A DNA stretch of 64,000 bases from Octopus bimaculoides (GCF_001194135.2 NC_068990.1:61745437-61809436), one strand, 5' to 3'; shown: positions 63,117-63,494, counted from the first letter of the stretch. Translations and numbers: made by a program. The notes: generated by a model not told the origin, from the sequence alone.

Positions 63117-63489
63117 ACATAATTAAGGGATCAGCAAGCATTTGCTTCACCATATACCGAAGTTCAGAAATAGCAGCTAAAAAAGCTGAGACTCCAACAG
63201 ATAGCATTACCTGTAACTCACAAAGGCAAAAACAAGAAGAAAAAACAATGAAAACTAACCATTTAAAGTTAAACATAAACGCGTTTCTGATGACGGAAAT
63301 TGAATTTTACCATTCATAATCCAGAAACGCATCTATGTTTAACTTTAAATGGTTAGTTTTCATTGTTTTTTCTTCTTGTTTTTGCCTTTGTGAGTTACAG
63401 GTAATGCTATCTGTTGGAGTCTCAGCTTTTTTAGCTGCTATTTCTGGACTTCGGTATATGGTGAAGCAAATGCTTGCTGATCCCTTAAT

Positions 63490-63494
<5 letters not shown>
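63117..63494. repeat. Near-perfect long inverted repeat (arms 63117-63289 and 63322-63494, 32-nt spacer)
   Basis: Manual block-by-block comparison gives 173-nt arms with 3 mismatches, all transitions. The mirrored ORFs 63080-63319(+)/63307-63648(-) and 63028-63276(-)/63335-63631(+) share near-identical peptides for this reason. Confidence 0.97.
63287..63337 (+). ncRNA. Hammerhead-ribozyme-like core at the apex of the inverted repeat (probably a Penelope-like-element relic)
   Basis: CTGATGA (63287-63293), then c-GGA...TGAAT-tttacc-ATTCA...TCC-a as stem II, then GAAAC-GC-ATC. The mirror arm reads GAAAC-GC-GTT. No intact stem I is present. Confidence 0.4.

What the first reader, a model, noticed from the sequence alone, without database searches (positions are those of the whole stretch)
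63117..63494. 173-bp near-perfect inverted repeat about 1.6 kb upstream of the ZF coding exon: candidate long dsRNA hairpin
Seen: arms 63117-63289 and 63322-63494 match at 170/173 with only a 32-nt spacer, and the spacer itself partly pairs (TGAAT/ATTCA, GGA/TCC). All three differences are transitions. On the ZF gene's strand they give two G-U wobbles and one A-C mismatch. Known: long intramolecular dsRNA is a substrate for ADAR and Dicer, A-C mismatches are favoured editing sites, and coleoid cephalopods edit RNA heavily. Inference: if the ZF 5'-UTR intron spans this site, the pre-mRNA carries a hairpin of about 190 bp that could be hyper-edited, yield endo-siRNAs or affect splicing. The high arm identity implies a recent origin or ongoing homogenisation.
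Basis: partly seen in the sequence, partly recalled or inferred. Interest (0 to 1): 0.75.

Follow-up and report, generated by a model that had tools for sequence, protein, structure and literature searches.

The report
Young palindromic insertion in octopus intron
The 173-bp near-perfect inverted repeat is real in this Octopus bimaculoides assembly, but it is a young, lineage-specific insertion into a TA microsatellite upstream of an Ikaros-like zinc-finger gene, an ordinary kind of hairpin-forming repeat that octopus RNA editing is already known to target.

Summary
Arms 63117-63289 and 63322-63494 match at 170/173, with a 32-nt spacer and three transition differences. On the gene (-) strand these give two G-U wobbles and one A-C mismatch.

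- **Source and gene.** The window is Octopus bimaculoides chromosome CM046610.1. The ZF ORF (59998-61461, -) is an 'Eos-like' C2H2 gene.
- **Empty site.** In O. vulgaris and O. sinensis the palindrome plus a 136-nt unique tail (62981-63116) is absent. Their site is a plain (TA)n microsatellite.
- **Age.** The arms differ by 1.7%, against about 12-15% divergence in the orthologous flanks. The palindrome is therefore much younger than the species split.
- **Copies.** No other copy was found in about 157 kb of octopod DNA. The genome itself could not be searched.
- **Intron.** A conserved 3' splice site lies 36 nt upstream of the ATG. No 5' exon was found within 10 kb, so the repeat is probably intronic.

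My best reading is a MITE- or foldback-like insertion, or a repair-made equivalent, with no dedicated function. If transcribed it should be hyper-edited by ADAR. Endo-siRNA production is unlikely, because molluscs show no endo-siRNA pathway. I rate it a new member of a known kind, of low interest.

The parts
63117..63289 (.). Left arm of the palindrome (173 nt). On the gene (-) strand it is the 3' arm of the hairpin.
   Evidence: Reverse complement of 63322-63494 at 170/173.
63290..63321 (.). Asymmetric 32-nt centre or spacer. It is a decayed continuation of the palindrome (GGAAATTGAAT / ATTCATAATCC at 8/11, or 7/10 without the outermost G-C pair, around a 6-nt loop TTTACC), with about 6 nt extra on the left side.
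   Evidence: Sequence reading, inner pairs in the fold.
63322..63494 (.). Right arm of the palindrome (173 nt). It abuts the (TA)n run directly.
62981..63116 (.). Unique 136-nt 'tail' next to the left arm. It is absent from O. vulgaris and O. sinensis together with the palindrome and is unrelated to the arm sequence.
   Evidence: blastn and reading of the orthologous loci. Local alignment of tail against arm is no better than shuffles. nhmmer finds no other copy.
63495..63600 (.). (TA)n/(TG)n/(CATA)n microsatellite on the promoter-distal side. It is homologous to the microsatellite that forms the empty site in O. vulgaris and O. sinensis.
   Evidence: Alignments A1 and joined flanks.
62820..62980 (.). 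Compound (CA)n(TA)n(TG)n microsatellite on the gene-proximal side of the insertion, much expanded relative to O. vulgaris and O. sinensis.
61498..61522 (-). Polypyrimidine tract plus CAG 3' splice site of the 5'-UTR intron. The coding exon starts at 61497, 36 nt upstream of the ATG.
   Evidence: L001 9940-9964 reads tttcttttttcttttctatttgcag|G. The site is conserved in 4 octopod genomes, and the mRNA contigs L006-L011 diverge exactly there.
59998..61461 (-). Single coding exon of a C2H2 zinc-finger gene (487 aa), named 'zinc finger protein Eos-like' in O. vulgaris RefSeq.
   Evidence: ORF, Pfam zf-C2H2, 99% identical O. vulgaris/sinensis orthologue P0001.

Best explanation
This is a young insertion of about 0.5 kb, specific to the O. 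bimaculoides lineage, sitting in a (TA)n microsatellite. It consists of a 378-bp near-perfect palindrome (63117-63494) and a 136-nt unique tail (62981-63116).

It lies 1.6 kb upstream of the conserved 3' splice site of the 5'-UTR intron of an Eos/Ikaros-like zinc-finger gene. I read it as a non-autonomous fold-back or MITE-like DNA element that landed in a TA-rich target and has no dedicated function.

**Shown:** the palindrome, the empty site in two sister species, the young age of the arms, the conserved splice acceptor, the lack of coding homology, and no Rfam family at its gathering score.

**Inferred:**
- that it arrived by transposition;
- that the intron spans it;
- that the pre-mRNA then folds into a duplex of about 175-185 bp, which octopus ADAR would hyper-edit and unwind, as it does for the many comparable young repeat hairpins in this genome. 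I do not expect it to be diced into siRNAs.
For: - **Palindrome.** It is confirmed and far beyond chance.
- **Source.** The window is O. bimaculoides GCA_001194135.2.
- **Empty site.** The orthologous upstream regions of O. vulgaris (L002) and O. sinensis (L003) align on both sides at 85-88% but lack window ~62828-63495. What remains there is a short (TA)n-rich tract.
- **Age.** The arms differ by 1.7%, against about 12-15% for the orthologous flanks. The palindrome formed at roughly a tenth of the depth of the species split.
- **Ends.** They read TTAA|GGGATCAGC...GCTGATCCC|TTAA and sit inside ACA-TA...TA-TGT. This is compatible with a palindromic TA or TTAA target duplication.
- **No coding or RNA-family identity.** It is under 600 bp. 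The open frames have no homologue among 5.8 billion clusters or 1.84 billion representatives. There is no Pfam hit. Rfam gives only sub-threshold miRNA-hairpin noise, and there is no tRNA.
- **Octopus transposons.** O. vulgaris has recently active MITE, Tc1-mariner and piggyBac families (PMC13282606).
- **Intron.**
- **Editing context.** O. bimaculoides shows exceptional hyper-editing. A fraction of 4.4e-3 of random 50-mers have a >95% inverted match within 2 kb. Self-folding palindromic Harbinger repeats are hyper-edited in frog (PMC5625713). Editing targets young repeats (PMC9989829). The 346 arm bases make up 5.4e-3 of this window, which is about the genome-wide density.
Against: - No second copy of the arm or tail was seen, even diverged, in about 157 kb of octopod DNA: the window, the L001 extension and L002-L005. 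Multicopy status, the defining property of a transposon family, is therefore untested.
- A target-site duplication cannot be told apart from the palindrome itself or from the TA microsatellite.
- The termini (5'-GGG...CCC-3' inside TTAA) are not the piggyBac CCC...GGG signature.
- The 136-nt tail has no convincing terminal inverted repeat with the far end (p about 0.06). A single-element reading therefore requires an asymmetric element.
- With only two effective lineages and no alignable outgroup, a deletion in the O. vulgaris/O. sinensis lineage is not formally excluded.
- There are no expression or editing data.
Confidence: 0.45

Rival explanations
1. The palindrome was generated locally. 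A double-strand break or stalled fork in the fragile, cruciform-prone (TA)n tract was repaired by fold-back priming or template switching (MMBIR-type). This copied 173 nt of adjacent or donor sequence in inverted orientation. The asymmetric 32-nt centre would be a later 'centre-break' scar that stabilised the palindrome. The consequences at RNA level are the same as in the best explanation.
For: - No other copy of the arm was found.
- One arm abuts (TA)n directly, while the other continues into unique sequence (the tail) without any repeat boundary.
- The centre is far more decayed (7/10 plus a 6-nt indel) than the arms (170/173).
- No clear target-site duplication or terminal motif of a known superfamily is present.
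Against: - It needs a prior event to place the 341-nt unique segment (tail + arm + spacer) in O. bimaculoides, since that too is absent from O. vulgaris and O. sinensis.
- The spacer sequence does not fit simple priming from the TGAAT/ATTCA microhomology. The expected continuation, ATTTCCGTCAT, is not observed.
- The amount of genome sampled is far too small to claim the sequence is single-copy.
Confidence: 0.3
2. The palindrome is ancestral and was deleted in the O. vulgaris/O. sinensis lineage. On this view it is older than the species split, its arms are kept similar by intra-palindrome gene conversion, and the sister lineage lost it through microsatellite-mediated deletion.
For: - Only two effective lineages are compared, and Argonauta is too diverged to serve as an outgroup here.
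- Long palindromes with short spacers are deletion-prone, and their arms are known to undergo gene conversion (general knowledge).
Against: - The arms differ by 1.7% against about 12-15% in the flanks. Sustained conversion would be needed to explain this.
- The sister-species site aligns as a continuous microsatellite without a deletion scar.
Confidence: 0.1
3. It is an assembly artefact. The fold-back would be a chimeric or mis-closed contig in a short-read, gap-rich scaffold and would not exist on one DNA molecule.
For: - The assembly is an Illumina-era scaffold with 12 N runs in 64 kb.
- The locus is embedded in microsatellites.
- No independent assembly of this species was available.
Against: - The arms carry three fixed differences (1.7%).
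- The centre is asymmetric and non-palindromic.
- The two arms have different flanks.
- The locus lies about 1.8 kb from the nearest gap.
- Library fold-back chimeras are normally perfect and have no spacer (general knowledge).
Confidence: 0.07
4. It is a dedicated functional hairpin. It could be an hpRNA or endo-siRNA locus, or an intronic ADAR-recruiting 'editing inducer' or splicing modulator acting on the Eos-like ZF transcript.
For: - The duplex is very stable and about 185 bp long.
- It probably lies in the intron on the gene's strand, 1.6 kb from the coding exon.
- It has an A-C mismatch on the gene strand.
- ADAR activity is heavy in octopus neural tissue (PMC5625713).
Against: - It is not conserved even in the sister species.
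- The arms match no coding sequence and nothing else in the window, including the ZF exon.
- Molluscs, O. bimaculoides included, show no evidence of endo-siRNAs (PMC12479628).
- No Rfam family reaches its gathering score.
Confidence: 0.08

Closest known systems
Self-folding palindromic MITEs, e.g. the ~200-bp palindromic Harbinger-derived repeats of Xenopus tropicalis (PMC5625713)
   Same: Both are short, non-coding and almost entirely palindromic. Each folds on itself with a short loop into a tight dsRNA without needing a neighbouring inverted copy. That class is a documented ADAR hyper-editing substrate.
   Different: The frog repeats are a high-copy family with a consensus and a known superfamily. 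Here no second copy, superfamily-specific terminus or unambiguous TSD was demonstrated, and the insert also carries a 136-nt non-palindromic tail.
Inverted pairs of young interspersed repeats in introns and UTRs, such as Alu pairs in primates and repeat pairs across Metazoa (PMC5625713, PMC9989829)
   Same: They are young, lineage-specific and located in non-coding transcribed sequence. They form long near-perfect dsRNA and are the main targets of A-to-I editing.
   Different: Those duplexes come from two independent insertions, usually hundreds of bases apart and more diverged. Here both arms share exactly the same end points and are 32 nt apart, which points to a single palindromic unit or a single duplication event.
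Drosophila hpRNA loci, i.e. long inverted repeats that give endo-siRNAs (from general knowledge)
   Same: Both are long intramolecular hairpins of a few hundred bp, and both are evolutionarily young.
   Different: hpRNAs derive from, and target, specific genes, and they depend on a dedicated siRNA Dicer/Ago2 pathway. Here no target or parental gene was found, and molluscs appear to lack endo-siRNAs (PMC12479628).
Microsatellite-targeting MITEs, such as rice Micron in (TA)n, and palindromic AT-rich repeats (PATRRs) (from general knowledge, not tested here)
   Same: The insertion or location is inside (TA)n tracts, and the DNA is AT-rich, palindromic and cruciform-prone.
   Different: There is no sequence relationship. 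Micron has subterminal rather than full-length inverted repeats. PATRRs are AT-rich throughout and drive translocations. The arms here are complex sequence of about 35% GC.

Membership tests
MITE / fold-back non-autonomous DNA transposon | Terminal inverted repeats | tested here: met
   The whole element is an inverted repeat, 170/173.
MITE / fold-back non-autonomous DNA transposon | Small size (<~800 bp) and no coding capacity | tested here: met
   378 bp, or 514 bp with the tail. The ORFs have no homologues or domains.
MITE / fold-back non-autonomous DNA transposon | Target-site duplication of a length characteristic for the superfamily | tested here: inconclusive
   The flanks allow TA (ACA-TA|...|TA-TGT) or TTAA (TTAA|GGG...CCC|TTAA). 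Both are palindromic, so they cannot be told apart from an extension of the inverted repeat or from the (TA)n target. The termini are not the piggyBac CCC...GGG.
MITE / fold-back non-autonomous DNA transposon | Multiple dispersed copies in the genome | not testable with these tools
   No octopus genome could be searched by DNA. There are zero further copies in ~157 kb of octopod sequence and no ORF-level trace in protein collections. The sample is too small to decide.
MITE / fold-back non-autonomous DNA transposon | Empty site in a related genome (presence/absence) | tested here: met
   O. vulgaris (L002) and O. sinensis (L003) lack it, and their site is a (TA)n tract.
ADAR hyper-editing substrate (repeat-derived dsRNA) | Long, near-perfect intramolecular duplex (Porath criterion: >95% identity, >=40 bp, inverted, within 2 kb) | tested here: met
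   173 bp at 98.3% with a 32-nt loop, folding at -310 kcal/mol. The criterion is from PMC5625713.
ADAR hyper-editing substrate (repeat-derived dsRNA) | Both arms lie on one transcript | tested here: inconclusive
   A conserved 3' splice site lies 36 nt upstream of the ATG, and no 5' exon was found within 10 kb. This implies an intronic position. It is inferred from another octopod's mRNA, not from O. bimaculoides RNA.
ADAR hyper-editing substrate (repeat-derived dsRNA) | Clusters of A-to-G mismatches in RNA relative to genomic DNA | not testable with these tools
   There was no access to RNA-seq reads.
hpRNA / endo-siRNA locus | 21-22-nt Dicer products from the arms and a dedicated siRNA pathway | not testable with these tools
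   No small-RNA reads were available here. The literature reports no evidence of endo-siRNAs in molluscs, including O. bimaculoides (PMC12479628).
hpRNA / endo-siRNA locus | Arms derived from, or complementary to, a target gene | tested here: not met
   There is no coding homologue of the arm frames. Nothing else in the window matches beyond a 27-nt chance hit. UTR-derived targets elsewhere in the genome were not testable.
miRNA precursor | Match to a curated family at its gathering score, with a hairpin of ~60-90 nt | tested here: not met
   All Rfam hits over 63216-63395 (MIR847, MIR859, mir-302) are far below their gathering scores. They reflect generic hairpin shape. The stem is about three times too long.

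The most novel reading that the evidence does not exclude
The insertion has been co-opted as a species-specific intronic regulatory hairpin. In this reading a ~185-bp dsRNA 1.6 kb upstream of the coding exon recruits ADAR as an 'editing inducer element' or alters 5'-UTR intron splicing. That would tune the editing or expression of an Ikaros/Eos-like transcription factor in O. bimaculoides but not in O. vulgaris or O. sinensis.
Probability: 0.05. Interest if true: 0.55.

Novelty: new member of a known kind. Interest (0 to 1): 0.22.

Why it matters
- **As an ordinary locus.** It is one more example of the young, repeat-derived hairpins that make the O. bimaculoides transcriptome so rich in ADAR substrates. 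Its share of this window (5.4e-3) is about the published genome-wide density (4.4e-3), so it tells us little that is new.
- **As a test case.** It comes with a natural empty-site control in two sister species. It could be used to ask what a freshly inserted perfect hairpin does to a host intron in a heavy-editing animal: hyper-editing, splicing or nuclear retention.
- **As a warning about assemblies.** It can also show whether palindromes with short spacers are stable, or correctly assembled, in cephalopod genomes.

Tried and rejected
- **Other copies.** blastn and nhmmer of arm, spacer and tail against the window, the L001 extension and the O. vulgaris, O. sinensis and Argonauta loci found none.
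- **ORF-level traces of other copies.** A pseudo-protein of the two open arm frames plus the tail gave no hit in the 5.8-billion-cluster protein collection. Exact look-ups of the 82- and 113-aa ORFs found nothing on record.
- **Representative search.** The exhaustive search gave one hit, P0102. It is a 31-aa, 39%-identity chance match multiplied by nine tandem repeats, and I rejected it.
- **Public DNA collections.** An exact 22-mer from the arm is absent from the metagenome, viral and prokaryotic genome collections. This was expected, since none of them holds octopus DNA.
- **Rfam, tRNA and promoter scans.** These gave only sub-threshold miRNA-shaped noise, mostly from microsatellites, and no tRNA-like SINE head. 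The bacterial-type promoter scan is irrelevant here.
- **Tail as a decayed arm copy.** Rejected, because the alignment scores no better than shuffles.
- **Tail end as a matching terminal repeat of the far end.** This is only a weak hint, p about 0.06.
- **Helitron.** Rejected by reading: there is no 5'-TC and no CTRR-3'.
- **piggyBac.** Not supported: the flanks are TTAA, but the termini read GGG...CCC instead of CCC...GGG.
- **PIF/Harbinger.** A 3-bp direct TSD is impossible with these palindromic flanks.
- **LINE twin-priming.** Judged unlikely, because that mechanism gives inversions and not 173-nt inverted duplications.
- **PacBio adapter-type artefact.** The spacer is not adapter-like, and the assembly is short-read.
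- **Search for the 5'-UTR exon.** blastn and nhmmer with the 5' UTR of another octopod's mRNA found nothing within 10 kb upstream in any species.

Full report
**Observation**

Window 63117-63289 and 63322-63494 are reverse complements at 170/173, separated by 32 nt. The three differences (63164/63447, 63278/63333, 63280/63331) are all transitions.

On the - strand, which carries the ZF gene, they give two G-U wobbles and one A-C mismatch. On the + strand they give one wobble and two A-C mismatches. The repeat finder extends the arms to 185 nt (63105-63506), but the extra 12 nt match at only 9/12 and are AT-rich flank.

As RNA the - strand folds into one continuous stem of -309.9 kcal/mol, against -81.9 +/- 5.6 for shuffles (z = -40). 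It is the only closely spaced inverted repeat of complex sequence in the 64-kb window. All the other long 'inverted repeats' there are self-complementary microsatellites.

**Where the window comes from**

The 487-aa C2H2 ORF at 59998-61461 (-) is encoded by exactly one record, Octopus bimaculoides GCA_001194135.2, chromosome CM046610.1. This is a gap-rich assembly with 12 N runs in the window.

The closest protein is 'zinc finger protein Eos-like' of O. vulgaris/O. sinensis, at 99% identity. An Argonauta hians orthologue is 87% identical, and transcript-like contigs from another octopod are 79% identical.

I fetched the orthologous loci with 10-kb flanks:
- L001: O. bimaculoides, reaching 7.4 kb beyond the window
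- L002: O. vulgaris
- L003: O. sinensis
- L004 and L005: Argonauta
- L006-L011: mRNA-like contigs

**Empty site in the sister species**

The 2.6 kb upstream of the ATG aligns with O. vulgaris and O. sinensis at 85-88% on both sides of the repeat. Window ~62828-63495 has no counterpart there.

Reading the three sequences and aligning them gives this picture:
- O. vulgaris and O. sinensis have a tract of about 90 bp rich in (TA)n. It lies between two conserved anchors, ...CCCCTTGTGCATG... and ...GATACACATATATGTCCACTCTGCTGGG....
- In O. bimaculoides the same interval is about 780 bp.
- It reads: a homologous microsatellite, then the 378-bp palindrome, then a 136-nt unique tail (62981-63116), then an expanded compound microsatellite.
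- The tail is unrelated to the arm.

The palindrome plus tail is therefore a lineage-specific insertion of about 514 bp into a (TA)n run.

The arms differ by 1.7%, whereas the orthologous flanks differ by about 12-15%. Barring sustained gene conversion, the palindrome is about an order of magnitude younger than the species split. This argues for a gain in O. bimaculoides over a loss in the other lineage. Argonauta is too diverged to act as an outgroup.

**What kind of sequence it is**

The sequence shows no sign of a coding or known RNA-family origin:
- The two open frames of the arm and the tail have no Pfam domain.
- They have no relative among 5.8 billion protein clusters.
- They have no real relative among 1.84 billion representatives. 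The single hit, P0102, is a 31-aa chance match repeated nine times in a tandem-repeat protein.
- Rfam gives only sub-threshold matches shaped like miRNA precursors.
- There is no tRNA-like head.

An arm 22-mer is absent from the metagenome, viral and prokaryotic collections, none of which contains octopus. The octopus genome itself could not be searched by DNA, so copy number, the key criterion for a transposon family, remains open.

The ends read TTAA|GGGATCAGC...GCTGATCCC|TTAA inside ACA-TA...TA-TGT. A palindromic TA or TTAA duplication is possible, but it cannot be separated from the palindrome or from the TA target. The termini are not the piggyBac CCC...GGG. A 3-bp Harbinger-type direct duplication is impossible, and Helitron ends are absent. 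The outer end of the tail resembles the arm terminus only weakly (p about 0.06).

The centre of the palindrome is much more decayed than the arms: 7/10 matches plus a 6-nt indel around a 6-nt loop. Either the master copy had that centre, or it is a later stabilising 'centre-break' scar.

**Position relative to the gene**

Immediately upstream of the coding exon the genome reads tttcttttttcttttctatttgcag|GCATTGACTG..., 36 nt before the ATG. This acceptor is conserved in O. bimaculoides, O. vulgaris, O. sinensis and Argonauta. The mRNA contigs of another octopod match the genomes up to exactly this point and then carry about 295 nt of unrelated 5' UTR.

That upstream UTR sequence is not found within 10 kb upstream in any of the genomes, either by blastn with 7-nt words or by nhmmer. 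So the gene has a 5'-UTR intron whose donor is probably more than 10 kb away. The palindrome, 1.6 kb upstream of the acceptor (61497 to 63117), then lies inside it on the transcribed strand. This is inferred across species. No O. bimaculoides RNA was available.

**Most likely mechanism**

I read the locus as a young fold-back or MITE-like non-autonomous element inserted into a TA microsatellite, with no function of its own. Octopus genomes are known to carry recently active MITE, Tc1-mariner and piggyBac families (PMC13282606).

If the intron is transcribed, the pre-mRNA folds into a duplex of about 175-185 bp with a short loop. Several papers bear on what happens next:
- Porath et al. (PMC5625713) showed that O. 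bimaculoides has exceptional hyper-editing.
- The same study found an exceptional genomic density of near-perfect inverted matches, 4.4e-3 of random 50-mers. The 346 arm bases here are 5.4e-3 of the window, about the genome average.
- It also showed that self-folding palindromic Harbinger repeats are hyper-edited in frog.
- Zhang et al. (PMC9989829) showed that editing across Metazoa, O. bimaculoides included, mainly targets evolutionarily young repeats.

The expected fate is therefore ADAR hyper-editing and unwinding. The A opposite C (63164/63447 on the - strand) is a favoured site by general ADAR knowledge.

A 2025 survey with O. bimaculoides small-RNA data mapped to this same assembly found no evidence for endo-siRNAs or a dedicated siRNA Dicer in molluscs (PMC12479628).

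**Rivals**

- **Local repair product (0.3).** Fold-back priming or template switching at a broken (TA)n tract would explain why one arm abuts (TA)n, why the other runs into unique sequence, and why no other copy was seen. It needs an earlier event to bring in the 341-nt unique segment, and the spacer does not fit simple priming from the TGAAT/ATTCA microhomology.
- **Ancestral palindrome deleted in the sister lineage (0.1).** This would require continuous arm homogenisation.
- **Assembly artefact (0.07).** The assembly is short-read and the locus is flanked by microsatellites. Against this stand three arm differences, an asymmetric centre and distinct flanks.
- **Dedicated functional hairpin (0.08).** It is not conserved even in sister species, has no detectable target, and the siRNA pathway appears to be absent.

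**Verdict**

The new information is that the hairpin is a recent lineage-specific insertion into a TA microsatellite, with a clean empty site in two sister species. It is a new member of a well-known kind, a young repeat-derived hairpin in a non-coding transcribed region of a heavy-editing animal, and its interest is low.

A genome-wide BLASTN of the arm, long-read confirmation, and hyper-editing-aware RNA-seq mapping would settle origin, reality and fate respectively.

Noticed in passing
window 59998-61522 (-): The ZF gene is a single-coding-exon C2H2 protein. It has several zinc fingers clustered near the N-terminus and a pair at the extreme C-terminus, an Ikaros-family-like layout, and it is named 'Eos-like' in O. 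vulgaris RefSeq. A 3' splice site 36 nt upstream of the ATG is conserved from Octopus to Argonauta. The O. vulgaris/O. sinensis orthologue is 485 aa against 487 aa here.
   Followed up: partly
L004 1881-2837 vs 5416-6353 (same in L005): In Argonauta hians, 3.6-8 kb upstream of the orthologous ZF gene, two inverted fragments of about 960 bp (91% identical, 2.6 kb apart) encode LINE-type reverse-transcriptase pieces. This is the usual 'two inverted repeats' route to intronic or upstream dsRNA. It is independent of the O. bimaculoides palindrome.
   Followed up: partly
L004 and L005 (Argonauta hians contigs BAAFZT010000028.1 and BAAFZT010000007.1): An identical 515-aa ZF protein, with near-identical flanks, sits on two different contigs. 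These are either uncollapsed haplotigs or a very recent segmental duplication.
   Followed up: no
window 62626-62689 and 62106-62255: Short interspersed repeats lie near the insertion site. Window 62626-62689 has an 89% copy at L001 6312-6375. Window 62106-62255 has ~81-83% copies at L001 3283-3429 and in O. vulgaris and O. sinensis. The conserved block next to the microsatellite (window ~62640-62800) may be a SINE-like element whose tail seeded the (TA)n target.
   Followed up: no
window 63290-63321: The centre of the palindrome is far more diverged (7/10 matches plus a 6-nt indel) than the arms (170/173). The two arm differences nearest the centre (63278, 63280) include a CpG-to-TpG change.
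   Followed up: partly
window, whole: The window is 28% GC and dense in (TA)n/(CA)n/(CATA)n microsatellites. It has 12 N gaps totalling 3,907 N. The ZF exon is the only convincing ORF in 64 kb.
   Followed up: partly
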